Positions 10,831 to 48,687 of a stretch of DNA of 64,000 nt are shown in pieces. The stretch lies in contig JAGIQG010000043.1 of the NCBI GenBank assembly GCA_024679065.1, forward strand, positions 1,054,001 through 1,118,000. Direction: 5' to 3'. The notes beneath the pieces were generated by a model. That model was not told the DNA's origin, searched no databases, and saw nothing but the letters and a program-made list of their open reading frames with translations. Numbering within the stretch: the first letter of the stretch is position 1; every line of letters starts with the position of its first letter. The translations under genes and the position numbers were made by a program. The stretch comes from Sphyrna mokarran. Its lineage: Eukaryota.

Positions 10831-10844
10831 ACAGGCAGAATTGA

Positions 10845-18075: not shown

Positions 18076-21000
18076 TTAGCGTATTGAACACAGCTTGGCG
18101 TATTGAAATATTACTGAGTGACTTTAAACCACATCAGGAGCAATAAAGCTTCACAATGCCTTGTAAAAATTCCATTTTCACCTTCAAATATATGGTTTTG
18201 ATTATCCTAAGCTGTTTTCTTTACAAGAACGAGAGAAGTTTCAGCCATTTCGAGGGAAATCTGATATTGAAAACACAAAATCAGTTTAATGTGAATCCCT
18301 CACTCTCCCGTCAAATATCAGTTTGTACTTTTAAAGTCATTTTGTAATTATTTATGTTGACCACCTATGAAAGAAATATACTTTACAATATTCGCTGGAA
18401 ACATTTGCACTGAAGTGATACAGCTCCACCTATGGGCAAATTCGTATTTGCACGAGGGCCATGAGAAAGGAGGTCAGGAAACATTTGATACGATTGACTG
18501 AAGCGTTAGTCATTCGGCAGCCAGATGTTATACCTCAATAATATATTCCCCGTGATTTTAGTTCGCTTGAATTCTGAGCCAAGATTTAGCACTTCTGCCT
18601 TACAGCGTCAACAATCCAGGTTTGATCCCCCCTTGGGTCACTGTCTGTGTCGGTGTTTTCTCTGGGTGCTCCCGTTCTGTTCAACAGTCGAAATACTAGG
18701 TGAATTGGCTATGCAAATTCTCTCTCAGTTAATGCGAATATGTGTCGGAGTATGGTGAGTCACAGCTGTTGGAATTTGAAAAATTGCAACATGTTTCTTG
18801 TTGAGGAGGTGAATACAAGTTACAAAACAGGTATCTGAAGTGAAAATAAAGATCAGCCACAATGTGACTACAAGATAGAATATTCTCGAGTTACTGAATA
18901 TATCCCCTCTCCGATGTTTGAGACCACGTGACATTGTCTCTTGGGCAAGCACTGAAATGAAGTACTGTTTTCCTGACTCGGGTTTGCAGGTCAGATATAA
19001 CAAAGTTTCATTTTCTATGCCCTTGCACTGATTGCAATGCCGGATTTTGTTTTCTATCCCTGAAACGAGCGATTCGCTGGTACTGTTCTGGTATCTGAGA
19101 TAGGCAATACCAGATATAGACGGTTAGTCACCTGCGGGGGAAAAAAAATACAGTGATCGATCACATTGTCATGTTCACCATTGATTAAATTCGATTTTAA
19201 TATAATTCGTTAATTAATTTCATTTACATTTATCCATCTGTCGGGCTTGTATTTGCAATTATCCATCTTGAAATAATGACTAACACTTGCCACTCAAGTG
19301 AGTGTCTCTTAGTGAATATTTTCGGCTGGTGTGGGACAACTCTATAGTTCCTAACACACAGTGGACATTGTGATTCCCTCTGCATCGGTTGGACACCTCG
19401 ACTCTCTCCAGGTGGCCTCCATTTAAGACATGAAGTGCTTCCATCTTGCGGTCCTGCATGTCTCTGGCCTTTCCAAAATTGATTATGCTTGCATGTGAAC
19501 AGAAACAAAAAACGTCTGAGATTTTTTGAACAGTGGTCGTGGACTCATCCACTTCCCAGAGGAGCAGAACCTCCCAACGGATATATTGATGATTGTTTCC
19601 CATGATCAGCTGCAAACCATTCATTCTTTCACCATGAAATTCTGATTATAAAAAGTAGGTATTGGCTTCATTTTCTGCGTGGCTTACTCGCTCAGTGTTC
19701 TAACCCTACAATTCCGCTCTTCCAGGGGATGACTGATGCAAAGGGATGCAGCACCACCGAGGACGATACAATATTCGTGGGCTGCGGTAACTCAGAGGAC
19801 TGGAAGGACTGTTGAAAATGCACTTTTTCAGAGAGCACCGGCTGCTGTTAAAAATGGCGAACGATAAACTTCAGAACGGTGCGAATTATGGCTCAACGTT
19901 TGCTCCTCATAAGGTAAGACCCTCAGTCTGCAACGTTAAATATTTACTAGCGCCTGCCAAATACACATGAAAACTCGCCCCAATTATGTTGAAAAGGCAA
20001 TCTTACTCAATTCAGCAACAGGACTGTTTCTGGAATGAATTCGAATGGGCACAGGAGGCAGCAGAATGTTGCATTGAATTAATTCCAAACACCCTACTAT
20101 ATTTTGTTTTAAGAAAACACGTACCCAATGAAGAACGATTCAAAATGCTGCAAATAACTTTGTAACGGTTTCACTCAACATATTTCTCATTATGTCTTTG
20201 TGTCATGTTTGCGTCATAATTCACCTCTTGACTAGCGGGCTGTGGGCCATCTATTCTGGGCTGACGGTTAAGTTTCACAGGAATTTCCTCCCACTTCTAC
20301 ATAACAGCCGCCAGTCTCCAACATCCTGGTAGTTATTTCTGTTGACTCCACACGAATAGAAGTAAACTGTTTGCGTCGAACCTGACTTATTTTTCATATC
20401 TTTAAAGTTTACATTGTCTCCCCTTCCCACTTTCAGCCTTGTCTTTCTTGGAGGACAAATCGTTACCAATTCAAAGCTTGCTCTGACTATTACAATTGTC
20501 AGATTAATTTTGTCCATGTTCTGACACAAACAAACATTTCTGCGTGGTATTTTTTCACCCGTGCTTTCAGACATCCGCGAACACAAGCATGTAAATATCT
20601 GACATTGCCAGCTCAACAAAAATCGCAGTATCACAAAGAAGATATTGAATTATACGTTTACTGTTTATCAAGATCAAGACAGACAAAATTTATACAGATA
20701 GAATAATAAATTGATATTCACGCTTCAACATTTGCAAAGATGTATAGTTCCTGTGAACAATTTGAGAGGTACAATTGTCTGAATATTTTCAATGGAATTC
20801 AGGAAATTTTCTTAGCCTCGCTCAATGCTTCTTCAAATTTGAAGAACACCGTTCCAATGTAATATCCAAAACACAACGTCCAATCATTTGCAGTGAAAAC
20901 TGGATCCTCCCTTTGGCGAATGCAGGGGGAAATTTCAGTTGTTTGAAGGGAATCCCTATTGGTTTCATATTGTTTCCAAGACGCTATGGGATTTTCGAGA

Positions 21001-22019
21001 AATCTTCCTTCTGGCAGGGGCGTAGTCAGGTCACACTAAAAGAATCACAAATTATAGAGACATCGTAGATTCCCTACAGAAGGTCTTCAGCCGATATATA
21101 TTTTAGATTACCCCGAACCGTCAACGCGTTGCATAACATCATAGAATGATACAGCTCAGAAAGAGACTATTTGCCAATTGAATCCATGCTGGGTTTTTGT
21201 TGGATATGTTTCTATGACCAGTTGACAGAGATGATAATTGCATATCGGAACTTTCACCCCCTAGTCCAAAAAATGGGAAAAGGAGGGCTTGCAAAGTCGG
21301 TCTGCCAAGCGCTCCCACACTCCACCTTGCTACACTTTTACGAGTCCATTTGGAACTTATTTCCCTCCACGTATTCACGTCACCTCTGAACTGATTACGA
21401 AAAATCACAAGCATACAACTCTCAAATCTTCCAACTGTGCCATTATTAAATATGGTCAAAGAACAATCTGCCTCAAATCTTCACTGTTGAAAGGCACTCC
21501 CCACAAACTGGCAATCTTTTTTGCCTTCAGTTTTTGTTCCCAACCTCTCAATCAAATGGCAACCACAATATGGTAGTTCTGATCCCATGTTTTGCGGAGT
21601 TTGGCAATAATCGTCTCGTGACTATCTTGTGGAAGAGTCACGTGCTTAGCAGTCAGAGATAATTTACTGTCTTACTGGTTAGTAAACTCCATAGAAATTT
21701 CAAATATATTCATCACATAAGATTACACTTTAATTAAAGTGCAGTTGCACTCTCTACACAGTTTATTTTGGTGAAATGTTGGCTCATGTTAGGGTATGAC
21801 AGCAGATCCGAAAAAAAAACTATCCACAGATATTGTTGCAGTCTTGAAGATATCTGCTTTCATTTTCCGTTTTAACCCTAATCACAATTAATAGGTTATT
21901 TCAGTGGCAGATGGTGCATAATATTGAAAAATGCAAAACTTTCCACTCAAGAGGAAAGATCCGAGAGTCAAGGTATTTTTCAAACTTGAAGGGTTGGGAC
22001 ATTCTGATATTCCAGTCTG

Positions 22020-22385
22020 AGCTGCACAGTGGCACTGTGGCCAGCACTGCTGCCTCGCTGCCGCGGGGATACTGCTTTAAATACATCTTTGGGTGACCCA
22101 TCTATGTGGAGTTTGCACCTTATTTCCCTTCTGCGTGGGTTTTCACCAGTACTTCAATTTCCTCCTCCACATCAAAAATGTGCTGTTGAGATCGATGACC
22201 ATTCTTATTTGCCCTTCAATGTCCGAAGATGGACAGGTTAGATTGATTTCCCCTGCCGAATTGCCCCTTCGAGTTACGAAGATTAGAAGGGTAAATACTA
22301 GGTTTACGGGAAATGGGCTTGGAGGGGGTTGCTGCCGGTGCAGCTCCGTGAGACAAATGCATAGTCGGGATTCTACGATTTTATA
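22020..22385 (+). mobile_element. Old HE1/V-SINE-like copy (mirror 49957-50322); paralogous copy at 32250-32610 (mirror 41350-41710)
   Basis: GCACAGTGG..AGCACTGCTGCCTC head and GTGGAGTTTGCAC core. Confidence 0.65.
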
Positions 22386-25300
22386 ATTCAGATAGCTTGA
22401 ATGTTCTTGTGCAGTCCAGAGGTTTATCAGAAGGTATTCAAGCAGTTTGGAAATCCATTATACGGTTCGTATTTATTGTAATGTTGGGTGTACTTCTTGA
22501 GATCGAAGAGCAAGAAATCCATGTTGCAAACAAACCGCAAGTCACTGAGATTATGCCAAGAATGCTGAGTGCCGTTTAGTTGTCTTTAACTGAGGAAAGC
22601 TGCGTTTGCATTTCAGGTAAGATTTCGATTGTTTGATTTCTGGCAGAAAAAAAGGCTTGTCCGATCTGGAGAGAGGCCTTAGAATGGATCGACATTAGTT
22701 GCAGTTCAGAAGAGTATTGTTATTAAATGATAAAATTCAAGCTGGGATCTCAGGAATAAGATTCAGAACTTGTTTGTGCCTCGCTGCGGAGTCTTGAACA
22801 GCGCGGTCATAGTCTCAAGATAAAGACTGAAATTAGCGGACAGTTCTTCATTCATAGATCTGCGAGCATTTGAGATGTTCTGCTCCAGGGAATTTTGGTT
22901 GTTCAATCGTCGGGAACATTGAAGGCAGAAATTCGCGTTCGCGAGGAATCAAGTCAATATGAAGTTAATGTCGAGTCAGATTTTAGTTGTCTGATGGAGA
23001 AGAACGTAAGTCTTTATTTAACATAATTCAGTATGTTAAACTCACGTGATTGTTACAATTCCTCGCCCTGACCACACAGTGCCGCTTGAAAATGCCTTGC
23101 CTGAGTCAGTTGTAGATGCGCCAAGTTTGGTGGCGTTTAAGAGGTTAGTAGATAATTTTATGGATGAAAAGGGAATGGATTAGTTTAGAGGGTCACTGCT
23201 TGTTCCTAATTGGTTGGCGCAACATCGAGGGCCGAAGGGCCTGTTCTGCACTGTAATGTTCTATGTTCTATGAACATGCCCATGCATTTCTCTATTATTC
23301 AGTCCTCCCGAAGGGAATTATTGCCTATTCCCTTTTCGTTTCTCCTTTTCCCTTACCTTGTCAAACACTCGACACTTTCCCATGCATAGAGTTGTGTCCA
23401 CCATTGATTCATGATGACAAGTCATTTATTTAAATCAAAAAGCCAAAAGAAGGCATGCTCAGAATGGAAAGGGGGTGGAAATTCTTATTGGTGAGGGTTC
23501 TTCACGAGTCTGATCCTGATGCAGTTCTTTGCTGGATGATGAAAATTGTGGAAACAAATGCCGCCATTGACTATCTAATTGAGAAAATGTCTGGCTGATG
23601 TCCAAAATATGGTTGGCACCAGTATTTGGTTTTGCATAGGAGAGCACAGAGTTATTAAAAAAGAGCAAACAACAAAGCAGCATGGGAAACAGGCCCTCCG
23701 AGCCAAAGAGTCCGCGCTGCCACCTCGACGTTCTCACTTCCACCCATGATCCTTGTCTATGTTTATAGAAACCTGCATTGGTATAACAATCTGCTTTGGA
23801 ACCAAATCTGTGAGACAATTCAGGGAGAATTTCTTCTGCCAATCAGCCTAAGAGCACGTCTTTGGGATGTGGGAGGAAACCGAAGCACCCGAAGAAAACC
23901 CACGTTAGCATGGGGGGGAATGTGCAAACTCCCACAGACACAGTGCCAATTCCATGTATCTGCAGAACACAGTGAGAGTCACTGAGCTGTCGTGTTGCCC
24001 ATGAACTAGTCCAGTTCCAGCCTACAGTAACGACGGGAAGTGCTAGGATACGATCGAAAAATCCAAGAGCAGCCCTCTCACGATCCATCGCGTGCATGCC
24101 CCTTGTTGGACACCAAGGTGGACCGAAATACCTGTAGGATAAAACAGAAAAAGATCAATATCATTCATAATGTGCTCCATTCTCAGGGAACTCTTAAGGC
24201 TCATGATCCCTATTTTAAATCAGTCTTCTACATCCGTCCATCCCCATTCTGTACTGTGCCCATCGAAGTATTTCAAAACTAACTCCAGCGTGCCTGCCTC
24301 CACCATCTTACTTGGCAGTGTCTTCCATACACCCACAACCCTCTGTGTGAAAAAAAAAAACTCTCTATAGCATCCGAATTATATCTTACCCCTCTCACCC
24401 TACGGCCGTGAACCCTCGTTATATTTGATTCCAACATAGGAAAACGCTTACCACTGTTTATTCTATCTGTACGCCTCATTATCGTGTACACCTCTTTTGG
24501 ATCTCCTGGCAATCTTTCGAAAAAAAATCAGCCCCAATTTGCCGACCCTCTCCTTGCAACACAGTCCTTCAATGCTATGCAGCATCCTGGTAAACCTCCT
24601 CTGCACTCTCTCTAGAGTGTCCACGTCCTTCTAGTAGTAAGATGACGAGAACTGGTTGCAATATTCCAAATGAGATCGAACCAAAATTCTATACACTTGC
24701 AACATTAAAGACCAGCTCTTGTACTCTAAATCACTTCCTATAAAGGTGAGCATATCATATGCTTTCTTCAGAACCTTCTCCACCTGCTCTGCCACCTTCA
24801 GAGACTTGTGCACCTGCACCCCCATGTCCCTCTGCGTTTCTATATTCTTAATAAGGCTACTCTTTACCATGTACCTCCGCTCTAGATTCTTTCTCCCAAA
24901 ATGCATCACCTCGCATTTATCAGGATTGAATTCCATCTGCCATCTATCTCCCAAGCTACCAGCCTATCTATATCCTGCTGTATCACCTGACAATGCTCCT
25001 CACAATCCGCAAGTCCAGCCATCTTTGTATCGTCTGCAAACTTGCTGATCACTCCACTTACTCCCTCTTCCAAGTCATTTATATATATTACAAATAGAAG
25101 TACCGAGAAATATGGTACTGAGCCCTGTAGCACAACACTAGTGACCGGCCTCTAGCTAAGAAAAAAAAACCCTTCCACTATTACTCTTTGTCTCCTATTA
25201 CCTAGCCAGTTACTTATCTATCTAGATACCTTTCTTTGTGTTCCATTAGCCTTGACCTTTTTAACTAACCTCCTATGAGGGACTTTGACCTTGCTGAAAT

Positions 25301-25929
25301 CCATGCAGACGATATAAATGGGTCGCCCTTCATCGGCGTTTTTGTCACCTCCTCAGAAAATTCTACCAGATTCGTAAGGCACGACCTCCCATGAACAAAG
25401 CCATGCTGCCTATCCCTAATCAGATCGCAAAACTCTACCTTATTTCTAAGAATCCCCTGAATCAGCTTCCCTACCACTCACGTCAAATTCACTGGCCTAT
25501 TTGAATACATTCGCATGAGTGCCTTTTCCGAGTCTTTACGTCGCTCGTCGACGTTTTTGTCTACCACTAGCAGATCCCACGCCTTGGGCTCTTGATCTTA
25601 AAGTACCACGGGTAGCACCCCAGCCGGGGTCTACTGAAGTTACCAATTGTTGCCTGCAGACCCCAGCCGGGGTCTGCCCAGGGCATATTTCGTGGCTCGC
25701 AGAGCTCCAGCCGGGGTCTACTGATGTCATTGTGGCTCGGTTGGGCACCCTGAGTGTGTTTAGGGCAGGGTGTGAGCTGGTACCGTCGCCCCCTGATCTA
25801 ATTGGGCGTTTAGAGAACCTTTGTCGGTATTTTCGGTGCTCGGTCCTCTTGCGTGAGGTGGGAAATTTAGAATTTAAGGGAAAATTTTATTCCGAATTCA
25901 GGGAAGCCAGATTAGGTGACGTGACAATT

Positions 25930-26120
25930 GTTCATAACCAATTAACCTAGTTAGCACATTTTTGGCCATGTGGGAGGAAACCGGAGTACCCAGGGAAAAC
26001 CCACGCGAACACGGGGAGAAAGTGCAAACTCCCCCAGCCGCAAGGCCCAGGTCGGGAACCGACCCTGGGTCCAAGTAGCCGGTCAACCTCAGTGCTAATC
26101 ACTGGGCTGACGTGCTGCCC
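25930..26120 (-). mobile_element. V-SINE (HE1-like) head and V-domain embedded in the R2-related element
   Basis: GGGCAGCACG..CAGTGATTAGCACTG..GGACCCAGGGTCGGTTCCCG..GGAGTTTGCACTTTCTCCCCGTG..CTCCGGTTTCCTCCCACA. Confidence 0.8.
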
Positions 26121-26431
26121 ATTCGTACCGTGACACCTTTGGGGGGTAATCGGTGTCATTATCTTTCGTCATCGTCTGGTAGTGAACATCCAAGACAAGA
26201 CGGGGCACACGTCCCATCTCAGCGTCACCCCAGGTGCGTCTCGTTCGTCTCACCCTTTGTACCGATGGTGTGGGTAGTGGGTCGCGGTTGCTTCTACTAC
26301 CTAGGCAGGGTGAACCGCATCCGCCAGCGGATCACCAGTGCCCCCGGGCCAAGCCTGAACTTGTCGAGAACCTAGTTTTTTGGAAATTTACCGGGTTTGT
26401 AGGCATAGAAGCGTGTTGGTTATCCTCGGCC

Positions 26432-26634
26432 AGTCAGATTCCGACAGACACTCGCCTGCCAGCAGGAGTGCCTGGATTCCCTGCGGGACCATCGGTAAGG
26501 GATGACTCACTGTGGTCTAGAACAACCAAAAATACCACAGCGACGCAACACACACCATAATCCATTCCAGCTTCACCACTCTAGGATGGCAGTCCTGTGG
26601 TAGTGGTCATGGACCTGGCATGCATCGCCCCCGC
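26432..26634 (-). ncRNA. Degenerate HDV-like ribozyme-shaped unit 3
   Basis: P1 GCGGGG/UCCCGC; hairpins GCGAUGCA/UGCGUCGC and CUGUGGU/ACCACAG; P2 AGUCA/UGACU; P4 AGGCACUC/GAGUGUCU; catalytic core not canonical. Confidence 0.5.
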
Positions 26635-26650
26635 TATTTGTTTCTCGACC

Positions 26651-26799
26651 AGTCACAGAATACCCTCTCTTGTGCCCAAGGAGAAGGTACCAGGTGGCTC
26701 CCGCGGAAGGGATTGACTCGCTGTGGGTAGAAACCAGAAGACCCCACAGTTACGATTGGCCGTTAACGCCTTGTTTCGGCTAACCAATCATACCCCACC
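26651..26799 (-). ncRNA. Degenerate HDV-like ribozyme-shaped unit 2
   Basis: P1 GGUGG/CCACC; hairpins UAUGAUUGG/CCAAUCGUA and CUGUGGG/CCCACAG; P2 AGUCA/UGACU; P3 CCC-UUCCGC-GGG; P4 UACCUUCU/AGAGGGUA. Confidence 0.55.
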
Positions 26800-26862
26800 G
26801 GTCTGTAACCGCAACCTTAAGGGGCATCCAGGCATGCAATTACTCCGCATCGTTTCTGGGAC

Positions 26863-27113
26863 AGCCGCTTTAGCCGCCACCGCGATGGATGTGCGGTGAC
26901 GTTGCCCGGCGGGACCGACGTGGAGGCGCAGCTCGCTGTGCGGCAGAAACGACAAGACCCGCACAGCTAAAGTAACCAAGAAACCTCAAGAGAGTCCCCC
27001 CAAGAGAGTCCTCCTTAAGAGAGTCATAGCTACTCCCGAGGGAATAACTAGAAACCTCAAGAGAGTCCCCCCAAGAGAGTCCTCCTTAATTTTTAAGAGA
27101 GTCATAGTTACTC
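26863..27113 (-). ncRNA. HDV-like (R2-type) self-cleaving ribozyme, core 26863-26933
   Basis: P2 AGCUGC/GCGGCU, P3 GCC/GGU, L3 UCCACGUC, P1 3' strand CCCGCC, GGGCAAC junction, P4 GUCACCGC/GCGGUGGC, J4/2 GGCUAA with the catalytic-C equivalent at 26873. Confidence 0.85.
27013..27113 (-). other. Two 28S rRNA fragments matching the sequence immediately upstream of the R2 insertion site
   Basis: 27113-27093 GAGTAACTATGACTCTCTTAA (21 nt exact) and 27038-27013 CGGGAGTAGCTATGACTCTCTTAAGG (25/26) versus the conserved 28S GGCGGGAGTAACTATGACTCTCTTAAGG^TAGCC. Confidence 0.9.
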
Positions 27114-28769
27114 CAATTTCCAGAGTTACACCTACTACTCTTTTTAAACAAAGGTACAACATTGGCTATTCTCCAGTCTTATCGGATCTCACCTGCGTCC
27201 AAAAAAGAGACAAAAAATTGGGTCAGAGGCCCAGCAATTTCACCTCGTGCCTCCCTAAGCAGCCTGGGATAAATGCCATCAGGTCCTGGAGATTTATCAG
27301 TTTTAATGCTCCCTGGAAGCTCTGATACTTCCTCCCTCGGTATGGATATTGCCTTTAACTTGCCTACAGCTCCCTCGGAGACAGGACCGGTCAACAAGCC
27401 CTCTCCTTCGTGAATACTGACGCAAAGTATTCATTCAGAATCTCTCCCATTCCCTCAGACTCTAAGCATAGTTCCCCTCCTCTGTCCCTAAGTGGACCGA
27501 TATTTCCTCTAACCACTCTTTTATTCCTAACATAGGAGTAAGAAGCCGTTGGATGCCCTTAATCCTATCTGCCAAAACCATTTCATGCCCTCCCTTTTGT
27601 CCTTCTAACTCCCCATCTGAGCTCCCTCCGGCTTTCTCTATATTCCACCAGCGCTCTCTCCGTTCCCAGTTGCTTTGAACTTCATGCAATGTGGCGGCCA
27701 GAATTAAAAACAATGCTACAAATTGGGGCCCATCAAAATTAAAAAACAACTGAAACGACCAGTATCAGGGATGAATCGGGCACGGGCCCCAAATCATTGG
27801 CTACATTTCTAGATCAAAAGTCCAACGAAAACACTACGAGACCACCACTTCCTCCTCATAAGAAATAAACATTAGTCCAGAATCCTGTCTTTACTTTCTT
27901 CTAACATAGTTTCATTTTACACTTTGACATCGGCCCAAAATGTCTCCTGCTAAAAAAAACAGCATCTCAGCAACAATGTGGTACTCCCTCGACATTGCAC
28001 GGATGTAACGACACGGATCAACTGCCAAAGTTTCAAGAACAGAATTGAGAATAAGAAATCCAGATCATGAATCTGTTATGATTTAGACACTCACGAACTG
28101 GAAATAAGTGTAGGCCACTCGGAAATTCGAGTTCTGCCATTCATTTTGATTATGGCTCATGATCCCATTCAATATCCTGATCCTCTCTCCTCCAGCCACC
28201 CCTCACCTCGTCCTCCCACCTCCCTGACCACTGTCACCCACTCACCATATCCCTTGCTTCCTTTACCCCTAAGAAAATGTCTAATTTAATCTTCAAAGTG
28301 GACTCCGAGAAAGGGACTGAAATTGATTTTGGTGCCTCTCACATCCGCCAATTTCCATCACCCCATCTTTCCTGCTTTGCGGTAAGCTGACACGGACCTC
28401 AGTTCTGGAGCTCTATCCCTGAACCGCTCTGCCTTTGAGTCTCTTTAAAATAAATCTTAAACCTGTTTGCCAATATTTATAGCTTAAACGGCCTAATCTA
28501 GGCAGCATCACTGGTCAACCTCTTCTGCAACTTTTCCAAAGCAACTACGTCCTGCCTATACTGCGGCGACCAGAATTGAATGCAATACTCCAAATGCGGC
28601 TTAATCGGAGCTTCATACAGTTGCATTTGCCAGCACTTCCCGAGATGAAGATCAAATCCGGACCCTGAGAACATTAGCTGAATTTCAGGATTAATAATTC
28701 AGGATAATATAACGAGGCCAACGTCTCCTCCTTGATCAGAATAAATATTAGTACAAAGTCTTATCGTTT

Positions 28770-30165
28770 CTCATAACATTTACACACTTTGATTCAAATT
28801 GTTCTGATTCACTTCAGAGTGATGGATCAAGAGGTGTGTGCATACAATTAGCCGATGTTTATAATGTAGATAAATGTGAGTTAGTCCACCTTGGTAGCAA
28901 AAATAGGGAGGCAGTATATTATTTGAATAGGTGTAACTTAACAGAAGTAGATACTCAATGAGACCTTGGTTTCCTCGGGCATCAGTCACAGAAACAAAGT
29001 GCGTAGGTAGAGCGAGAATTAAAGGAGGAAAATGGTATGCTAGCCTTCATAGCGAGGGGATTTAAGTATATGGATAGGGAAGTTTTTCAACAATTGCATT
29101 GGGCGTTGGTACGCCACACCTGGAATATTTTGTGCATTTGTGGTGTCCTTGTCTAAGGAAAGATATAGAGAGCGCAGCGAAAGTTCACCAGGCTGATTCG
29201 TGAGATGGCAGGTCTGTCACATGAAAAAAGAGATAGAACATAAAACATACAACACTACAGCACAAACAGGCCCTTCGCCCCACAAGTTGTGTCGATCATA
29301 ACCATACATATTGTGCCACAGAATTATCTGTAACGCCCAATCCTATTTAATCCATATACTCATCCAGAAGTCTTTTAAAAGGCCCCAGCGAGTTACGCCT
29401 CCACCGCCACCGACGGCAGTCAATTCCAATCACTCACCACCCTCTGCGTAAAAAAAAACCTACCCTGCAACAGCTCTTCTGTACTTGCTGCCCAGCACCT
29501 TAAACCTGTGTCCTCTCATAGTGACCATTACAGCCCTGGGAAATAACCTCCGAGAATCCACTCTTTCCAATGCTCTCAACATTTTAAAAACCTCTATCGG
29601 GTCGCCTTTCAACCTTCGTCTCTCCAGGGAGAAGAGACTGAGCTCCCTCAACCTATCTTCATAAGGCATGCCTCCCAATCCAGACAACATCCTTGTAAAT
29701 CCCCTCTGCACCCTCTCGATAGACTCCACATCCTATATATCATATACGATTATATTCACTGGAATTTGGAAGACTGACAAGGAATCTCATGGAAACGTAT
29801 GAATTTTTTCATCAGTTTGTGATGGTGGATGCAGAAAGCAAGTTTCCGATGGTGGGGGAGTCCAGATCTAGTGTTCATATTTTGAAGGTAAGTGTTCATC
29901 TTTTAGCACTGAGCTAAGGAGACATCTCTTCACTCAGAGAGCCGTGAATATGTAGACTTAACTGCCACAGAAAGTTGTTGACACAAAAACATAGTGTTAT
30001 TTCTAGACGATACTAGGTATATCTCTTGGGAATCCAGAATTTAAGGGATATGGAAGTCAGGCGAGGTCAGGGCATGAATTTGATGATTACCCATGAACAA
30101 AATGAATGATGGAAAAGGTTTGAATGGCTGAATGGCCAACACCTGTTTCTATGCTCAGTGCTACA
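28770..30165. mobile_element. Old plus-strand LINE fragment with an inverted LINE 3' fragment nested at about 29232-29735 (mirror 43790-45186)
   Basis: ERVQRGFTRML..LFSLERRRL motif on the minus strand, flanked by colinear plus-strand LINE remnants. Confidence 0.7.
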
Positions 30166-30544
30166 ATGTAACCATTTTGACACTCCTCTTTCGAATTATG
30201 CTATGCGTACGGAGTAGCAAAATGCCCTCCCGGGAGTGAATGAATGTCAGCTTTCACTTTGACAAATAATAACAAAGGCAGGTCGTTTCTTAAATGAGAA
30301 ATTGGCAATTGTGACCAGACAACGGGGCCTAGTTATCTTTGCTCTTGAGTTACAACATGTGGGTGTATAAGCAAGTCGGAAGGTTCCCAAGGTTTGGAAA
30401 ACTTCATCGCCAAGGCACTTATGCACACTTGTAAGGGTTTCATTGATGTATATATATATAGGTTTGCCCACATGGTTATTGTTCATATTATTACCACGCA
30501 TAATTAATCTCTAGATATGCACCTACTTTCTTTTTGTTTAGCTT

Positions 30545-30892
30545 CAGACATGGGGGTGTCTAGTTGCTGAGCATTTCTTGTACCTCATTAGTTGCCCCAG
30601 GGCAGTTGAGACTCAACAACATTGCTGTGGCTCTGGAGTTCAATATAAGACAAATTTGGTAAGGATAGAAGATTCCTTTCCATAAAGGGTATTAAAAAAA
30701 CATTTTTTTTTTGTTTTTTAATAGTCGACAATGGTTTAACGGACATCAGTAGATGTTTAGTTGCACTTGCTTCTTTTTTTCTTGAATTCAAATTCCACCT
30801 TCAGCCATGACAGTATTCGAACCCGGGTCCCCAGAATATTAGCTGAGTTTCTCGATTACTAGTGAGAATGCCACTCGGCCATCGTCTCGCCT
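30545..30892 (-). mobile_element. tRNA-derived SINE, SacSINE1/Deu-like (mirror 43063-43410, plus)
   Basis: GATGGCCGAGTGG A-box, GGGTTCGAATAC B-box, GGTGGAATTTGAATTCAA body; family assigned from memory of shark SINE consensus sequences. Confidence 0.55.
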
Positions 30893-33029
30893 ATTTACTC
30901 CCTACCATCCAAAAACCCCAATCCTGTATATCCTTCGTGACGGCTCTATGTGTTTATTGTATAGGGATCTTGTGAAAGAGGGAGTAGAACAACGGTTTAC
31001 CAGGTAGATTCTTGGGTTGCCGTTCTGTCATTTCAAGAGAGACTTATCCCGTCAGTACCATATTCACTGGAGTACAGATGAGTGAAAGGGGATCTTATAG
31101 AATCATATAAAATTTCAACAGGTGTAGACAGGGTAGATTCAGAAAGAATGCCCCCAATGGTAGGGGAGTCACGAACAAGTAATCAAATTTTGAGGAGATT
31201 GGGCAAACCATTTAGAAAGGAGGGGACGTTTATTCACCCAGAGAAAGTAGCTGAGGCCAAATTGATGCCTGATTTCAAGAATAAGTTCGATTTATGGCTA
31301 AAGGGATGAAAGGAATTGGGGGAGGGGGGATCAGTATATGTTATGCGATGATAAGCCACGAACTAAATGAATGGTGGAGCAGGCTAGAAGGGCTGAATGG
31401 CCTGCTCATTTTTTTTGTCTCTGTGTTTCTATGAACAGTTGACAAACATGATTATTTCATATTGGAAATTTTGCCATCTACTCCAGGACCATGGGACCAG
31501 GAGAGTTTGTAATGTTGGTTTGCGAACTCTGCCCGCACCCCACTAAAAATCAGCTCGCTCACCACTTTAACGAGTCAGTTTCGAACTTACCGTTCCCGCC
31601 TTGCATGTGTTCACGTTCTCTCTGAGCCAATTACACAAAATCACAAATATGCAACTCTCAGTTCTGTCATCACAATCATCATCAAATATGGAAAAAGAGC
31701 AAATGTACCTCAAATCGTCATTGATGAAGGGCACTCCCCACAACCCGGGAATCGTTTTGCTTTACTCTCTGTTCCAAACCTCTCAATCAATTTGCAACCA
31801 CAACCTGAAAGTTCTAACTCCATGCAGTGCGGAGTTTGACAATAATCGCCTATTGGTCACCTTGTGGGAGAATCATGTGGTTATCATTAAGAGAGAATTT
31901 GCTATCTCACTGGATAGTAAATTCCGAAGTATTTTCAATTATACTCATCAGTCAGGACTCCACTTTAATGAAATTTTCGTTGCACTCTCTACTCAGTTCA
32001 TTTCGGTGAAGTATATGTTCATATTAGGTATGACAGCAGATCGTAATAAATTCCCCACAGCTGTTGTTACAAGCTTGAGGATATCTGGTTCCACTTCCCG
32101 TTCTAACTCTAAACGTAATTAATTGACTAATTAAGTGGACGGTGGTATGTGATATTGAAACATGTGAAAGTATTCACTCGAGTGGAAAGATCTGAAAATC
32201 AGGATTCTTGTAGAACTTGTCGGATTAGGACATTCTGACATTTCAGTATGAGCGGCACAGTCGCACAGTGGTCAGCAATGCTGCGTCACGGCGCCAGAGA
32301 CCTTTGTTTAGTTACATCCTTGGGTCACCATCTGCGTGGAGTTTGCACCTCTCCCCGTGTCTGCGTGGGTTTCCACTGATGCTTCAGTTTCCACTCACAG
32401 ACCAAACATGTGCTTATTGTGTGGACTGGCCATTTTATTTGCCCCTTAGTTTCCAAAGATGGGCAGTTTGGATTGATTTGCCCTTCTAAAATTCCCACTA
32501 CGGTCAGGAAGATTAGCAGCGTAAAAACCTGGGTTCATGAGAAATAGGTCTTGAGGGGACTGTTGCTATTATAGACTCACTGATTCAAATTCATAAGTCC
32601 TATAATTTTATGATTCAGATAGCTTTCATGTCCTTGTGCAGAACATATATTTACCAGAAGGTACCCGAGCAATTAAAAAACACATTTCTTTGCTGCTATT
32701 TACTGCAATGGTTGGAGTATTTATGATGATCAAATAGTAAGAAATACTTATTGCAAGCAAACCTTATGTCAGTCAGATTGTGCCCAGAATACTGAATGCC
32801 GTTTAGTTGTCTTTTTTATAGGAGAAAGCTGCATTTGCCTTTCAAGTAAGATTCTGAAGCTTTATTCTGGCAGGAAAGATTTGTCCTGTCTGAGCACATT
32901 CATTAGAACGGATCAACGTTAGGTGGACTTCAGGAAATGAATATCTGTTATTGAAAAGATTCGGGCTACGATTTAAGTATTGAGATTGAGAACTTGTTCA
33001 TGCCTTGCTGGTGAGTCGACAACATCGAG

Positions 33030-35480
33030 GCCTAATATTAGGCCTAATATTGATTGGAATAGCTATAAATCCAGCTCGTTAGAGGGGTCAGTTTTTGTAC
33101 AAAGTGTGCAGGAAGGTTTTTTGACTCAGTAAGTAGATAGGCCAACTAGAGGTGAGGCTACATTGGATTTGGTGCTGGGCAATGAGCCAGACCAGGTGTT
33201 AGACTTGGAAGTTGTGAACATTTTGGTGATAGTGACCACAATTCGGTTACGTTCACCTTAGTGATGGATAGGGATAGGCATGAAGCTGGGGTCAGTAGTT
33301 ATAGCTGGGGGAAGGGTAATTATGAGGCCATCAGGAGAGAATTAGGGTGCATAGATTGGACTAGGGAACTACAGGGACTGGGAACATCTGGAATGTGGTG
33401 CTTATTCAAGGAGCAGCTGCTGCGAGTCCTTTATAAGTATGTCCCTGTCAGGCAGGGAGGAAATGGACGAGTAAGAGAGCCTTGGTGTACGAAAAGAGTT
33501 GATTTGCTGGTTAAGAAGAAAAAGGAGGCTTATGTCAGGAAGAGGCTTGAAGGCTCAGGTAGTGCAATGGATAGCTATAGATTAGCTAGGAAGGAGGTAA
33601 AAAGTGAATTGAGGAGAGCTAAGAGGGGACACGAGAAGATGTTGGCTGATAGGATTAAGGAGAATCCTAAAGCTTTCCTTCGATATGTTAAGAATAGAAG
33701 ATTGGTTAGGGCAAGATTAGGGCCAGTCATAGACAGCAGTGGGAAGTTGTGCGTGGAGCTGAAGAGATTGGAGAGGCACTGAATAAATATTTCTCTTCGG
33801 TATTCACGCAGGGTGATGTAAATGTAGTTATGGAGAACACTGAGGTACAGGGTTGCAAACTGGAAAGTATTGAAGTAGATAGGGAGGATTTGCTAGATAT
33901 TCTCGAGGGTTTGAAGTTGGATAAGTCCCCTGGGCCGGACGGGATTTACCCTAGGATTCTCTGGGAGGCAAGAGAGGAGATTGCAGAGCCTCTGGCTCTG
34001 ATCTGCAGGTCGTCGTTGGTTACGGGTGTGGTTCCGGAGGACTGGAGGATAGCGAATGTGGTCCCGTTGTTCAAGAAGGGGAAGAGAGACCTTCCAGGGA
34101 ATTATAGGCCAGTGAGTCTTACTTCTGTTGTGGGCAAAGTATTGGAGAGAATTATTAGGGATAGGATTATAGTTATTTAGAGAGAAATGAATTGATTGGG
34201 GATAGTCAGCATGGTTTTGTGAAGGGTAGGTCGTGCCTTACTAACCTCATTGAGTTTTTTTGAAAAAGTGACCAAAGAGGTGGATGGGGGTAAGGCGGTT
34301 GATATGGTATATATGGACTTTAGTAAGGCGTTCGATAAGGTGGCCCATGGAAGGCTTCTGCAGAAAATGCAGATGTATGGGATAGAGGGTGATTTAGCTA
34401 ATTGGATTAGGAATTGGCTAGCGGATAGAAGACAGAGGGTGGTGGTTGATGGGAGATATTCAACGTGGAGTTCGGTTACAAGTGGTGTACCTCAGGGGTC
34501 TGTTTTGGGGCCCCTGCTGTTTGTAATTTTTTATAAATGATCTGGATGAGGGTATTGAAGGATGGATTAGTAAATTTGTGGATGACACTAAAGTCGGTGG
34601 AGTGGTAGATAGTGAAGAAGGGTGTTATAGTTTGCAGAGAGACTTGGGCAAGTTGCAGAGCTGGGCTGAGAGGTGGCAAATGGAGTTTAATGAGGAAAAG
34701 TGTGAGGTAATGCACTTTGGCAGGAGTAATAAATGTGTAGAGTATAGGGCTAATGGTAGGATTCTTAACAGTGTTGATGAACAGAGGGATCTTGGTGTAT
34801 TTGTGCATAGATCCCTGAAAGTAGGCAGTCAAGTCGATAAGGTTGTTAAGAAGGCATACGGAGTCTTAGCTTTTATTGGTAGGGGGATTGAATTTCGGAT
34901 CGCAACGACATTTTGCAACTGGACAAAACTCTAGTGCGGCCACCCTTGGAGTATTGTGTGCAGTTCTGGTCCCCACATTATAAGAAAGATGTGGAGGCAC
35001 TGGAGAAGGTACAAAGGAGGTTTACCAGGATGTTGCCTGGTATGGAGGGCAGGTCTTATGAGGAGAGGCTCAGGGATTTGAGGTTGTTTTCGTTAGAAAG
35101 GAGGTGGCTAAGAGGAGACCTTATCGTAACATATAAGATGATTAGAGGTTTAGATAGGGTGGACAGTGATAGCCTTTTTCCTAGGATGGAGAAAGTTAGC
35201 ACGAGGGGACACAGCTTTAAATTAAGGGGAGGTTGTTATAGGACGGATATCAGATGTAGGTTCTTTACCCAGAGGGTGGTTAGGGAGTGGAATGCCCTGT
35301 CTGCGGCAGTTGTAGATGTGCCAAGTTTGGTGACGTTTAAGTGGTTAACTGATAAGTTTATGGAAGAGAAGGGAATGGTTTAGTTTGGAGGTTCATTGCT
35401 TTTTTCATAATTGGTCGGTGGAACATCGAAGGCCGAAGGGCCTGTTCTGCGCTGTAATGTTGTATGTTCTATGTTCTAGG
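33030..35480 (+). mobile_element. 5'-truncated CR1 LINE (APE end plus RT plus 3' UTR)
   Basis: LDLVLGNEP..SDH, KSPGPDG and GVPQGSVLGP motifs; several homopolymer frameshifts; (GTTCTAT)n tail. Confidence 0.9.
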
Positions 35481-36419: not shown

Positions 36420-36642
36420 AACTCCAGAACGCATCAACACATTAAATGTAATTTGCCATGGCCAATCAACTTGACTTACATATCTTTAGACTATGGAGAG
36501 AAATTGTCGCAACGAGAAGACTCTTGCAGAGACACGGAGAGATTGTGCAACCTGCACTCTGTTAGTGTTCCAAGCCAGGTTCCAAACCCAGGTTCCTTGG
36601 ATCTGTGAGGCAGCAAGGCTAACCATTATGCCACGGTGCCGG
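36420..36642 (-). mobile_element. Degenerate HE1-like SINE (mirror 37317-37550, plus)
   Basis: GGCACCGTGGCATAATGGTTAGCCTTGCTGCCTCACAG head. Confidence 0.65.
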
Positions 36643-36961: not shown

Positions 36962-37006
36962 TCTTCTCCATTGAATGTAATCCGATTTGACATAATCTCA
37001 ACCTGC
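36962..37006. other. 45-bp spacer at the palindrome axis
   Basis: Flanked by a perfect stem of about 53 bp (36909-36961 / 37007-37059). Confidence 0.9.
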
Positions 37007-46275: not shown

Positions 46276-48687
46276 GTTCAAAGCAACTGGGAACGGAGAG
46301 AGCGCTGGTGGAATATAGAGAAAGCCGGAGGGAGCTCAGATGGGGAGTTAGAAGGACAAAAGGGAGGGCATGAAATGGTTTTGGCAGATAGGATTAAGGG
46401 CATCCAACGGCTTCTTACTCCTATGTTAGGAATAAAAGAGTGGTTAGAGGAAATATCGGTCCACTTAGGGACAGAAGAGGGGAACTATGCTTAGAGTCTG
46501 AGGGAATGGGAGCGATTCTGAATGAATACTTTGCGTCAGTATTCACGAAGGAGAGGGCTTGTTGACCGGTCCTGTCTCCGAGGGAGCTGTAGGCAAGTTA
46601 AAGGCAATATCCATACCGAGGGAGGAAGTATCAGAGCTTCCAGGGAGCATTAAAACTGATAAATCTCCAGGACCTGATGGCATTTATCCCAGGCTGCTTA
46701 GGGAGGCACGAGGTGAAATTGCTGGGCCTCTGACCCAAATTTTTGTCTCTGTTTTGGACGCAGGTGAGATCCGATAAGACTGGAGAATAGCCAATGTTGT
46801 ACCTTTGTTTAAAAAGAGTAGTAGGTGTAACTCTGGAAATTGTAGGCCAGTGAATTTGACGTGAGTGGTAGGGAAGCTGATTCAGGGGATTCTTAGAAAT
46901 AAGGTAGAGTTTTGCGATCTGATTAGGGATAGGCAGCATGGCTTTGTTCATGGGAGGTCGTGCCTTACGAATCTGGTAGAATTTTCTGAGGAGGTGACAA
47001 AAACGCCGATGAAGGGCGACCCATTTATATCGTCTGCATGGATTTCAGCAAGGTCAAAGTCCCTCATAGGAGGTTAGTTAAAAAGGTCAAGGCTAATGGA
47101 ACACAAAGAAAGGTATCTAGATAGATAAGTAACTGGCGTGGTAATAGGAGACAAAGAGTAATAGTGGAAGGGTTTTTTTTTTCTTAGCTAGAGGCCGGTC
47201 ACTAGTGTTGTGCTACAGGGCTCGGTACCATATTTCTCGGTACTTCTATTTGTAATATATATAAATGACTTGGAAGAGGGAGTAAGTGGAGTGATCAGCA
47301 AGTTTGCAGACGATACAAAGATGGCTGGACTTGCGGATTGTGAGGAGCATTGTCAGGTGATACAGCAGGATATAGATAGGCTGGTAGCTTGGGAGATAGA
47401 TGGCAGATGGAATTCAATCCTGATAAATGCGAGGTGATGCATTTTGGGAGAAAGAATCTAGAGCGGAGGTACATGGTAAAGAGTAGCCTTATTAAGAATA
47501 TAGAAACGCAGAGGGACATGGGGGTGCAGGTGCACAAGTCTCTGAAGGTGGCAGAGCAGGTGGAGAAGGTTCTGAAGAAAGCATATGATATGCTCACCTT
47601 TATAGGAAGTGATTTAGAGTACAAGAGCTGGTCTTTAATGTTGCAAGTGTATAGAATTTTGGTTCGATCTCATTTGGAATATTGCAACCAGTTCTCGTCA
47701 TCTTACTACTAGAAGGACGTGGACACTCCAGAGAGAGTGCAGAGGAGGTTTACCAGGATGCTGCATAGCATTGAAGGACTGTGTTGCAAGGAGAGGGTCG
47801 GCAAATTGGGGCTGATTTTTTTTCGAAAGATTGCCAGGAGATCCAAAAGAGGTGTACACGATAATGAGGCGTACAGATAGAATAAACAGTGGTAAGCGTT
47901 TTCCTATGTTGGAATCAAATATAACGAGGGTTCACGGCCGTAGGGTGAGAGGGGTAAGATATAATTCGGATGCTATAGAGAGTTTTTTTTTTCACACAGA
48001 GGGTTGTGGGTGTATGGAAGACACTGCCAAGTAAGATGGTGGAGGCAGGCACGCTGGAGTTAGTTTTGAAATACTTCGATGGGCACAGTACAGAATGGGG
48101 ATGGACGGATGTAGAAGACTGATTTAAAATAGGGATCATGAGCCTTAAGAGTTCCCTGAGAATGGAGCACATTATGAATGATATTGATCTTTTTCTGTTT
48201 TATCCTACAGGTACTTCGGTCCACCTTGGTGTCCAACAAGGGGCATGCACGCGATGGATCGTGAGAGGGCTGCTCTTGGATTTTTCGATCGTATCCTAGC
48301 ACTTCCCGTCGTTACTGTAGGCTGGAACTGGACTAGTTCATGGGCAACACGACAGCTCAGTGACTCTCACTGTGTTCTGCAGATACATGGAATTGGCACT
48401 GTGTCTGTGGGAGTTTGCACATTCCCCACCATGCTAACGTGGGTTTTCTTCGGGTGCTTCGGTTTCCTCCCACATCCCAAAGATGTGCTCTTAGGCTGAT
48501 TGGCAGAAGAAATTCTCCCTGAATTGTCTCACAGATTTGGTTCCAAAGCAGATTGTTATACCAATGCAGGTTTCTATAAACATAGACAAGGATCATGGGT
48601 GGAAGTGAGAACGTCGAGGTGGCAGCGCGGACTCTTTGGCTCGGAGGGCCTGTTTCCCATGCCGCTTTGTTGTTTGCTCTTTTTTAA
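46276..48687 (+). mobile_element. Decayed CR1 LINE, uninterrupted mirror of 23655-27680 (holds the empty target site at 46842/46843)
   Basis: Continuous ..GTAACTCTGGAAATTGTAGGCCAGTG.. (the LINE PGNYRPVSL-like region). Confidence 0.88.

What the first reader, a model, noticed from the sequence alone, without database searches (positions are those of the whole stretch)
26863..26933. HDV-like ribozyme that is complete only when the element sits in 28S rRNA
Seen: AGCUGC-GCC-UCCACGUC-GGU-CCCGCC-GGGCAAC-[P4 GUCACCGC/GCGGUGGC]-GGCUAAA-GCGGCU maps element by element onto the HDV genomic ribozyme (GCC-UCCUCGCU-GGC..GGGCAAC..GGCGAA). The P1 3' strand CCCGCC is the exact complement of 28S GGCGGG, which starts 28 nt upstream of the R2 site, a known R2 cleavage position. 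The inserted copy starts at GAGTAAC, about 5 nt short of that cut. Inference: the template was a near full-length ribozyme-released RNA, and this copy has lost most of P1 (only CGGG at 27038-27035 could partly substitute).
Basis: partly seen in the sequence, partly recalled or inferred. Interest (0 to 1): 0.85.

Follow-up and report, generated by a model that had tools for sequence, protein, structure and literature searches.

The report
R2 ribozyme lacking its 28S strand
A stray, gene-less copy of a ribosomal-DNA jumping element carries a self-cutting RNA motif of a well-known type that needs six letters of ribosomal RNA to fold, letters this copy lost when it landed elsewhere; the design itself is already known from other animals.

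Summary
On the minus strand, 26933->26863 holds an HDV-like ribozyme core: P2 6 bp, P3 3 bp, P4 8 bp, L3, J1/4 GGGCAAC, and J4/2 GGCUAAA with the candidate catalytic C at 26873.

Rfam's HDV model matches full length but below threshold (25 bits against 50). The core motif is unique in the window and absent from 100 shuffles.

The core lies about 180 nt inside a 1614-nt insertion (27113->25500). That insertion is missing from the other arm of a 99.6%-identical palindrome. It has no long ORF and begins with a 28S-derived leader.

The P1 3' strand CCCGCC has no full partner in the 267 nt upstream. Its exact complement GGCGGG is 28S position -28 to -23, the most frequent R2 self-cleavage site (Eickbush 2013). 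The leader starts at -23. A second, internal leader starts at -26.

This is therefore an ordinary R2 "Rz-28" ribozyme in an ectopic, non-autonomous copy, probably disabled by a 5-nt loss at its 5' end. A full-length copy of the released RNA would carry its own P1 strand.

No cleavage, RNA or cross-species evidence was obtainable. First-stage notes report the same kind of ribozyme elsewhere in this genome; I could not check them.

The parts
25500..27113 (-). Whole 1614-nt insertion (sense = minus strand). It is an R2-derived element without a long ORF, absent from the other palindrome arm. There is no target duplication or deletion.
   Evidence: Self-BLAST: 24000-25499 = 48342-46843 at 99.5%, and 27111-29500 = 46845-44455 at 99.2%. 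Filled and empty sites were read. No sense ORF of 80 aa or more. The longest sense ORF overlapping 26010-27113 is 70 aa.
27084..27113 (-). Leader A: 28S-derived sequence beginning at position -23 (GAGTAAC...). It has a 7-nt insertion before the final AAGG.
   Evidence: The 19-mer matches at 27113-27095 with 0 mismatches. It matches the 28S strings in the PMC3774820 legend. The sequence was read.
27013..27038 (-). Leader B: internal second copy of the 28S leader, beginning at -26 (CGGGAGTAGC...), with one A-to-G change.
   Evidence: The 19-mer matches at 27035-27017 with 1 mismatch. Direct repeats D1 and D2. Sequence.
26979..27089 (-). Two perfect 40-nt copies (26979-27018 and 27050-27089) of the first element-specific sequence that follows each leader.
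   Evidence: the repeat finder family D1, 100% identity, spacing 71.
26935..26967 (-). 9-bp hairpin in J1/2 just 5' of the ribozyme core. Its 5' arm holds UGCGGG (26963-26958), a 5-bp partial partner of the P1 3' strand.
   Evidence: MFE and centroid of the 259-nt 5' region. Partner scan. Duplex -9.1 kcal/mol against -11.6 for the 28S motif.
26863..26933 (-). HDV-like ribozyme core: P2, P3, L3, P1 3' strand, J1/4 (P1.1), P4, J4/2 and P2 3' strand.
26908..26913 (-). P1 3' strand CCCGCC. It is complementary to 28S -28..-23 and has no full partner locally.
   Evidence: Literature.
26873..26873 (-). Candidate catalytic cytosine in J4/2 (GGCUAAA).
   Evidence: It aligns with the C of GGCuAA in the RF00094 consensus. 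Coordinates.
26420..26755 (-). Two further paralogous modules (about 26755-26630 and 26545-26420). Each is a hairpin plus a ribozyme-shaped fold, with diverged core sequence.
   Evidence: Alignment A1, 68% mean column identity. 87.3% of cells paired against 36-52% when slid. No HDV match from Rfam at E up to 10.
46842..46843 (+). Empty target site in the other palindrome arm (...GGAAATTG|TAGGCCAGTG...).

Best explanation
This is the 5' self-cleaving HDV-like ribozyme of an R2-type (28S rDNA-specific, non-LTR) retrotransposon. It belongs to the common class that cuts the 28S/R2 co-transcript 28 nt upstream of the insertion site.

The element encodes everything except the 5' strand of helix P1. 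It encodes P2, P3, L3, the P1 3' strand, P1.1, P4 and J4/2 with the catalytic C. The missing strand is 28S rRNA GGCGGG at -28 to -23.

In rDNA, RNA polymerase I reads through 28S into the element. P1 then forms across a roughly 100-175-nt J1/2, and the RNA is cut just 5' of GGCGGG. The released RNA keeps a 28-nt rRNA leader.

The copy here is a 1614-nt, ORF-less derivative, presumably mobilised in trans by R2 protein (inferred). It was reverse-transcribed into a non-rDNA site inside one arm of a young palindrome. Its 5' junction lies at -23, so 5 of the 6 P1 nucleotides were lost, and the ribozyme most likely cannot cut at this locus.

Shown here: the anatomy, the boundaries, the leaders, the complementarity, and the absence of a local partner. 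Inferred: cleavage activity in a 28S context, trans-mobilisation, and inactivity at this locus.
For: The core anatomy and coordinates are given.

RF00094 matches full length, with the catalytic segments near-identical to the consensus: J1/4 7 of 7, GGCUAA in J4/2, and CCUCC.CG..GG in L3/P3. Its misfit is concentrated in P1: two of its six marked non-standard pairs, a 6-position deletion next to the 5' strand and one in the 3' strand.

The core motif is unique in the window, with 0 of 100 shuffles matching. P2 plus P4 arise by chance in 66 of 200,000 shuffles.

The P1 3' strand pairs 6 of 6 with GGCGGG at -11.6 kcal/mol. The best local alternatives give -9.1, -8.0 and -5.4. No 6-of-6 partner lies in the 267 nt upstream.

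The 28S-derived leader occurs twice, against 0.01 expected. The leaders start at -23 and -26, and neither extends beyond -28.

The insertion is exact relative to an empty site in an arm 99.6% identical. There is no 28S sequence at the 3' side, as expected for an RNA-mediated event.

Literature. In PMC3774820, -28 is the most frequent site, P1 is built from 28S, P1-P1' spacing runs from 23 to over 700 nt, and truncated or tandem 28S leader duplications of 13-28 nt occur at 5' junctions. In PMC11331408, Rz-28 is the most common class and has a GC-only P1. PMC6795142 cites unpublished work placing medaka R2Ol cleavage at -28.

Three paralogous modules keep the hairpin, P2, P3 and P4 pairing, with 8 pairs changed on both sides.
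Against: The Rfam score is half the gathering score, and E is only 0.2 even for a 601-nt search. Energy alone gives z -0.9.

No R2 ORF or recognised R2 3' UTR lies in the element. The R2 assignment therefore rests on the leader, the ribozyme type and the precise insertion.

No related copy from another genome could be obtained. All 22 metagenome matches lacked the leader (0 of 22). No reads could be laid.

The covariation comes from only three paralogues, and the tested structure was derived from one of them. That inflates the slid control.

Partial substitutes for P1 exist, with 5-bp and 4-bp pairings. One natural R2 ribozyme works with a 4-nt P1, so inactivity here is not proven.
Confidence: 0.8

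Rival explanations
1. The ribozyme is still active at this locus. It would use a substitute P1 5' strand inside the element: UGCGGG in the J1/2 hairpin arm (26963-26958) or CGGG of internal leader B (27038-27035). It would then cut within the element's own 5' region.
For: UGCGGG gives 5 contiguous pairs at -9.1 kcal/mol, against -11.6 for the 28S motif. Leader B gives 4 pairs at -5.4. PMC3774820 reports a natural R2 ribozyme (N. vitripennis) with a 4-nt P1 that cleaves up to 32%.
Against: Both substitutes leave the pair next to the cleavage site unpaired. UGCGGG is locked in a 9-bp hairpin in both the MFE and the centroid structures. A single P1 mismatch abolished in vitro cleavage of the horseshoe crab R2 ribozyme.
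Confidence: 0.1
2. It is a dead relic in any context. The family's ribozyme no longer cleaves even with a 28S leader, as in the sow bug and horseshoe crab R2. The leader would be inherited from a master copy rather than made afresh by cleavage.
For: The element is non-coding and its 5' end is rearranged, with a tandem leader and a 7-nt insertion. P3 has only 3 pairs, one of them G-U. PMC3774820 documents R2 ribozymes with correct folds but no activity.
Against: L3 keeps a U, G and CC at the consensus positions, J1/4 is intact, and J4/2 keeps its C plus AA. The insertion is younger than a 99.6%-identical duplication, so the family was mobile recently. Leader A matches 28S at 19 of 19 positions.
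Confidence: 0.12
3. The 28S leader reflects random 5' truncation of an uncleaved 28S/R2 read-through transcript during reverse transcription. It would not reflect ribozyme release at -28.
For: 5' truncation is common in R2 and other LINE insertions (PMC6795142 passage). Only two leader ends are available here.
Against: Both leader ends (-23 and -26) fall within 5 nt downstream of -28, and neither lies beyond it. The P1 3' strand points at exactly that position. Leader duplications of characteristic length are the documented signature of upstream cleavage.
Confidence: 0.07
4. It is a chance resemblance to the HDV fold in GC-rich repeat DNA, not a ribozyme at all.
For: The Rfam hit is sub-threshold at E 0.2. 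Energy is not distinctive. The same degenerate core pattern hits 22 unrelated metagenome contigs by chance.
Against: The core motif occurs once in the window, and 0 of 100 shuffles match. P2 plus P4 arise in 3.3e-4 of shuffles. It lies about 180 nt downstream of a 28S leader, and its P1 strand is complementary to the known -28 site. This three-way coincidence is not expected by chance.
Confidence: 0.02

Closest known systems
R2 HDV-like ribozymes that self-cleave at 28S position -28 ('Rz-28'): earwig, silkmoths, Nasonia giraulti, flour beetle A, planaria, zebra finch (Eickbush, Burke & Eickbush 2013, PMC3774820); medaka R2Ol (PMC6795142); ZoAl prediction (PMC11331408)
   Same: The P1 5' strand is supplied by 28S -28..-23. 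P1 is GC-only. J1/2 is long and contains the rest of the leader. The core segments (L3, J1/4, J4/2) are HDV-like. Truncated or tandem 28S leaders occur at 5' junctions.
   Different: This copy lies outside rDNA, lacks any ORF, starts at -23 and so has lost P1. It carries the leader plus about 45 nt of 5' sequence twice. It is followed by two diverged ribozyme-shaped modules. No activity data exist. Sequence-level comparison with the published vertebrate ribozymes was not possible, because Figure S2 of PMC3774820 is a supplement and was closed.
HDV genomic ribozyme / Rfam RF00094
   Same: Same order of helices and near-identical catalytic strands. GGGCAAC matches 7 of 7, and CCUCC.CG..GG and GGCUAA are present.
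   Different: 25 bits against a gathering score of 50. P1 is not contiguous with the core, which costs the model its P1 pairs. P4 is short. J1/2 is about 100-175 nt instead of a few nt.
R2 SIDEs (short internally deleted elements) of Drosophila (Eickbush & Eickbush 2012, PMC3414825; abstract and outline seen)
   Same: Non-autonomous: a 5' R2 ribozyme with no ORF, presumably propagated by R2 protein in trans.
   Different: SIDEs sit in the 28S R2 site, and their ribozyme cuts at the element junction. Here the copy is ectopic and the cleavage site lies upstream in 28S. Homology of the 3' end to an autonomous R2 was not tested.
R2Bm copies outside the 28S gene (Xiong, Burke & Eickbush 1988; seen only as a reference-list entry in PMC3774820)
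   Same: R2 machinery occasionally inserts at non-rDNA sites.
   Different: I did not read that paper, so no comparison of junctions or target similarity is possible.

Membership tests
HDV-like self-cleaving ribozyme | Nested double-pseudoknot order: P1 5' strand, J1/2, P2, P3, L3, P3', P1', P1.1/J1/4, P4, J4/2, P2'. | tested here: met
   P2 6 bp, P3 3 bp, P4 8 bp, and P1.1 (CC of L3 with GG of J1/4), all in the canonical order. P2 plus P4 arise by chance in 66 of 200,000 shuffles.
HDV-like self-cleaving ribozyme | P1 helix of about 6-7 bp whose first pair defines the cleavage site. | tested here: not met
   No 6-of-6 partner of CCCGCC lies in the 267 nt upstream at this locus. The best candidates pair at 5 and 4 positions and lack the first pair. 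The feature is met only if the 28S motif GGCGGG is supplied.
HDV-like self-cleaving ribozyme | Catalytic C in J4/2 followed by purines. Conserved U, CC and G in L3. | tested here: met
   GGCUAAA has its C at 26873. L3 is UCCACGUC. Both align to the consensus positions of RF00094.
HDV-like self-cleaving ribozyme | Reaches the Rfam RF00094 gathering score. | tested here: not met
   25.0 bits against 50. The window has 0 matches at gathering thresholds.
HDV-like self-cleaving ribozyme | Mg-dependent self-cleavage that depends on the catalytic C. | not testable with these tools
   This needs a co-transcriptional cleavage assay.
R2 ribozyme of the -28 class | P1 3' strand complementary to 28S -28..-23. 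| tested here: met
   CCCGCC pairs with GGCGGG at 6 of 6, -11.6 kcal/mol. The position was counted from the leader and from the 28S strings in PMC3774820.
R2 ribozyme of the -28 class | Lies at the 5' end of an R2 element, directly behind 28S sequence. | tested here: met
   The 28S-derived leader forms the first 30 nt of the insertion, and the core starts 180 nt in.
R2 ribozyme of the -28 class | The element is an R2: R2 ORF (zinc fingers, Myb, RT, endonuclease) or a 3' UTR shared with an autonomous R2. | tested here: inconclusive
   There is no long sense ORF. The 3' 261 nt are strongly structured (z -5.4) but match no Rfam family. No autonomous R2 of this genome was available for comparison.
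R2 ribozyme of the -28 class | Residence in the 28S R2 site. | tested here: not met
   The flanks are palindrome-arm DNA. The empty site is ...GGAAATTG|TAGGCC.... This copy is ectopic.
R2 SIDE (non-autonomous R2) | A 5' R2 ribozyme joined to an R2 3' end, no ORF, and junctions typical of target-primed reverse transcription. | tested here: inconclusive
   The ribozyme is present, there is no ORF, and the insertion is precise. The identity of the 3' end as R2 was not tested.

The most novel reading that the evidence does not exclude
Borrowing P1 from the first six nucleotides of the rRNA leader may act as a lineage filter that keeps R2 in rDNA.

At the 28S site, the cDNA anneals to the target, so every new copy regains an intact P1. 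At ectopic sites the 5' junction forms by end-joining and erodes a few nucleotides (here 5, and 2 in the internal leader). Ectopic copies could then no longer release their RNA and would be one-generation dead ends.

In addition, this non-autonomous family carries three tandem ribozyme-shaped modules whose pairing is kept by compensatory changes. Modules 2 and 3 may therefore have a selected RNA function, such as folding chaperone, protein binding or 5'-end protection, that has not been described for R2.
Probability: 0.2. Interest if true: 0.6.

Novelty: new member of a known kind. Interest (0 to 1): 0.33.

Why it matters
The copy is a small natural experiment. It is a young insertion with an exactly defined empty site, and it records what the R2 RNA 5' end looked like in vivo: a leader ending within 5 nt of -28. 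It also shows what happens when the element lands where the cDNA cannot anneal.

This supports, for this genome, the upstream-cleavage model that was established in vitro mainly for arthropods. It also shows recent R2-type activity outside rDNA on a non-coding passenger.

It does not reveal a new ribozyme design. R2 5' modules are now used for RNA-templated transgene insertion (PMC11331408). Natural variants with long, structured J1/2 regions and repeated modules could therefore be of practical interest.

Tried and rejected
- Rfam at gathering thresholds on the whole window found nothing. The HDV hit appears only in E-value mode. No other HDV-like family (CPEB3 and so on) appeared at E up to 10.

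- One metagenome scan used a degenerate core pattern. It gave 22 loci, and 0 of 22 have the leader within 260 nt upstream. They look like GC-rich prokaryotic sequence; that is my judgement from composition, not a test. So no relatives were found and no cross-species covariation was possible.

- Sequencing runs: 5 runs hold part of the element. There is therefore no copy number, no junction variants and no RNA ends.

- Modules 2 and 3 as ribozymes with their own P1 partners: exact complements of their P1' candidates do exist upstream. Chance gives that in 359 and 523 of 2000 shuffles, so nothing can be claimed. Rfam sees no HDV match in them.

- Target resemblance: the 40 nt upstream of the empty site were aligned to leader B. 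The score was reached by 1265 of 5000 shuffles, and the ungapped identity is 4 of 26, so the resemblance is not significant. The downstream half could not be tested, because no tool gave me the 28S sequence 3' of the R2 site.

- R2 3' UTR: Rfam E-value scan of the 3' 500 nt gave 4 weak, unrelated matches.

- The organism was not identified, because run names are coded. A cartilaginous fish is only my guess from LINE protein motifs.

- Literature searches turned up no paper describing ectopic R2 copies that lost P1. Subscription journals and supplements were not covered.

Full report
WHAT IS THERE

On the minus strand, 26933->26863 (71 nt) reads AGCUGC-GCC-UCCACGUC-GGU-CCCGCC-GGGCAAC-GUCACCGC-(9-nt loop)-GCGGUGGC-GGCUAAA-GCGGCU. 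This is the canonical order of an HDV-like ribozyme downstream of its P1 5' strand:
- P2, 6 bp including one U-G pair
- P3, 3 bp including one G-U pair
- L3
- the P1 3' strand
- J1/4, whose first two G can pair with the CC of L3 to form P1.1
- P4, 8 bp
- J4/2, with the candidate catalytic C at 26873
- the P2 3' strand

IS IT MORE THAN CHANCE

Rfam at gathering thresholds finds nothing in the 64-kb window. In E-value mode on 26600-27200, the best of six weak matches is RF00094, the HDV ribozyme. It scores 25.0 bits (gathering score 50), E 0.2, covers model positions 1-89 of 89, and lies at 26939->26861 on the minus strand.

In that alignment the catalytic strands are nearly identical to the consensus. 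The misfit is concentrated in P1, where the model forces GCGAG to pair with the P1 3' strand: two of the six marked non-standard pairs fall there, with a six-position deletion beside the 5' strand and a one-position deletion in the 3' strand.

The core pattern CCTCCNCGNNGGN7GGGCAAC occurs once in the window at up to two mismatches, and in none of 100 dinucleotide shuffles. With the core fixed, a P4 of at least 6 bp plus a full 6-bp P2 in the right places arise in 66 of 200,000 composition-matched shuffles.

Nested folding energy alone is unremarkable: -29.1 kcal/mol, z -0.90, and 33 of 200 shuffles fold as well. That is usual for a pseudoknotted RNA, and I do not count it as evidence against.

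CONTEXT

The window is a large palindrome. 8344-25499 equals the reverse complement of 46843-64000 at 99.6% over 17.2 kb. The inner part, 27114-46845, is its own reverse complement at 96.9%.

The one large difference between the arms is a 1614-nt insertion, 27113->25500 in sense orientation. The other arm keeps the empty site ...GGAAATTG|TAGGCCAGTG... at 46842/46843. There is neither duplication nor loss of target bases.

The insertion has no sense ORF of 80 aa or more. The longest sense ORF overlapping 26010-27113 is 70 aa.

It begins with GAGTAACTATGACTCTCTT, and that 19-mer recurs 78 nt further in with one change (0.01 matches expected by chance). Figure legends of Eickbush, Burke & Eickbush 2013 (PMC3774820) quote the same string, preceded by GGCGG, as 28S sequence duplicated at R2 5' junctions. 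Counting back from the AAGG that ends each leader, the first leader starts at -23 and the internal one (CGGGAGTAGC...) at -26.

A perfect 40-nt repeat follows each leader. Then comes a 9-bp hairpin (26967-26935), and then the ribozyme core.

THE MISSING HELIX

The P1 3' strand CCCGCC has no 6-of-6 partner anywhere in the 267 nt upstream, flank included. The partial partners are:
- UGCGGG at 26963-26958: 5 bp, -9.1 kcal/mol, but buried in the hairpin.
- Two GGGGGG runs: 5 of 6 pairs with an internal mismatch, -8.0 kcal/mol.
- CUCGGG of the internal leader: 4 bp, -5.4 kcal/mol.

The exact complement GGCGGG gives -11.6 kcal/mol. GGCGGG is 28S -28 to -23.

LITERATURE

I read the Results and the first part of the Discussion of PMC3774820. 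The relevant points are:
[quoted passage not shown] - P1 and its partner are separated by 23 to over 700 nt.
- Some 5' junctions carry truncated or tandem 28S duplications of 13-28 nt, attributed to joining at the cDNA end without annealing.
- One P1 mismatch abolished cleavage in horseshoe crab, while a 4-nt P1 works in Nasonia vitripennis.

Passages of PMC11331408 call Rz-28 the most common class, with a GC-only P1. Passages of PMC6795142 report, citing unpublished work, -28 cleavage for medaka R2Ol. Passages of PMC13188248 report many R2s in cartilaginous and ray-finned fishes. The abstract of PMC3414825 describes ORF-less R2 derivatives (SIDEs) that keep the ribozyme.

READING

The feature is an ordinary R2 ribozyme of the -28 class, carried by a non-coding R2-derived element that was copied into a non-rDNA site.

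Three observations fit an RNA intermediate released at -28. The insertion's boundaries are an rRNA leader that stops within 5 nt of -28 at one end, and an element end with no 28S sequence at the other. The internal leader stops 2 nt short of -28. The P1 strand points to exactly that position.

At an ectopic site the cDNA cannot anneal to upstream 28S, so the 5' junction forms by end-joining and a few nucleotides are lost. Here that removed GGCGG, which is five of the six P1 nucleotides.

An HDV-type ribozyme lies entirely 3' of its cut, so the released RNA carries its own P1 strand. A full-length ectopic copy would therefore be complete anywhere. This copy is incomplete because of the 5-nt loss.

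Whether the crippled ribozyme retains any activity through the partial partners cannot be decided in silico. I think it unlikely (about 0.1), because both substitutes leave the cleavage-site pair unformed.

RESULTS AGAINST, OR MISSING

- The Rfam score is sub-threshold.
- There is no R2 ORF and no recognisable R2 3' UTR. The 3' 261 nt are strongly structured, z -5.4.
- No relative from another genome was found: all 22 metagenome matches to a degenerate core pattern lack the leader.
- No reads could be laid.
- Five runs hold part of the element's words, including runs labelled as two other organisms and a metatranscriptome. Without laying them I cannot say which part they hold.
- The resemblance of the target's upstream half to the 28S leader is not significant: 1265 of 5000 shuffles reach the same score.

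SIDE OBSERVATION BEARING ON THE FOLD

The hairpin-plus-ribozyme unit is the first of three paralogous modules about 213 nt apart (hairpin motifs at 26940, 26725 and 26514). Aligned, they share 68% mean column identity.

I tested a structure derived from module 1: hairpin, P2, P3, P1.1 and P4, 27 pairs in all. It is kept in 87.3% of 79 cells, against 36-52% when the partners are slid by 1-3 columns. Eight pairs are changed on both sides, and P2 is paired in 100% of cells.

There are only three sequences, and the structure came from one of them, so this is suggestive only. Modules 2 and 3 have lost the consensus catalytic strands and give no HDV match.

EARLIER NOTES OF THE SCAN

First-stage notes on this window (s1-887573, s1-887585, s1-887655) describe the same element, its three modules and the empty site. 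I confirmed the boundaries and the empty site. I partly confirmed the modules.

Notes on other pieces of the same genome (s1-887037, s1-887047, s1-886609, s1-887775, s1-887087, s1-887125, s1-886709) report R2 copies outside rDNA with 28S leaders and -28-type ribozymes. I could not see those sequences. If those notes are right, the phenomenon is recurrent in this genome.

VERDICT

The kind is already well known, so this is a new member of it. Interest is moderate to low (0.33).

Noticed in passing
window 8344-64000: The window is a large palindrome. 8344-25499 equals the reverse complement of 46843-64000 at 99.6% over 17.2 kb. The inner 27114-46845 is self-reverse-complementary at 96.9%, with its centre near 36,980. 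The R2-derived insertion is the one large arm difference seen.
   Followed up: partly
window 26420-26970, minus strand: Three paralogous modules about 213 nt apart, each a 9-bp hairpin plus a ribozyme-shaped fold. Pairing is kept (87.3% of cells, 8 pairs changed on both sides). Only module 1 keeps the HDV catalytic strands.
   Followed up: partly
window 26972-27113, minus strand: The 28S leader plus about 45 nt of element 5' sequence is present twice. The 40-nt core is 100% identical between copies. Leader A has a 7-nt insertion (AAATTAA) before AAGG. Leader B is preceded by TTCCCT and starts at -26. The origin is unresolved: a template jump, an aberrant junction in a master copy, or a DNA-level duplication.
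   Followed up: partly
window 26855-27113, minus strand: The 259-nt 5' region folds far better than shuffles (-110.8 kcal/mol, z -4.4, 0 of 200). The pyrimidine-rich leader (CUCUCUU) pairs with the G-rich element segments. The repeats may inflate this value.
   Followed up: no
window 26872-26877, minus strand: A second GCGGCU overlaps the end of P4 and the start of J4/2. It is identical to the P2 3' strand and could compete with it for the P2 5' strand, giving a possible misfold (seen when the script picked it first).
   Followed up: no
window 25500-25760, minus strand: The 3' end of the element is strongly structured (z -5.4, 0 of 200 shuffles). It has a twice-repeated CAGUAGACCCCGGCUGG motif and a near-palindromic GCAGACCCCGGCUGGGGUCUGC. 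No Rfam family matches.
   Followed up: partly
window 46803-46872 and flanks of the insertion: The insertion sits exactly 5' of TAGGCC in what reads like a LINE reverse-transcriptase ORF. That is my reading of the translation, with no search run. Similarity of the upstream 40 nt to the 28S leader is not significant (1265 of 5000 shuffles).
   Followed up: partly
element 25500-27113 (runs X1-X5): Runs labelled as two other organisms and one metatranscriptome hold 5-20% of the element's 31-mers. The family or a part of it may be shared between species.
   Followed up: no
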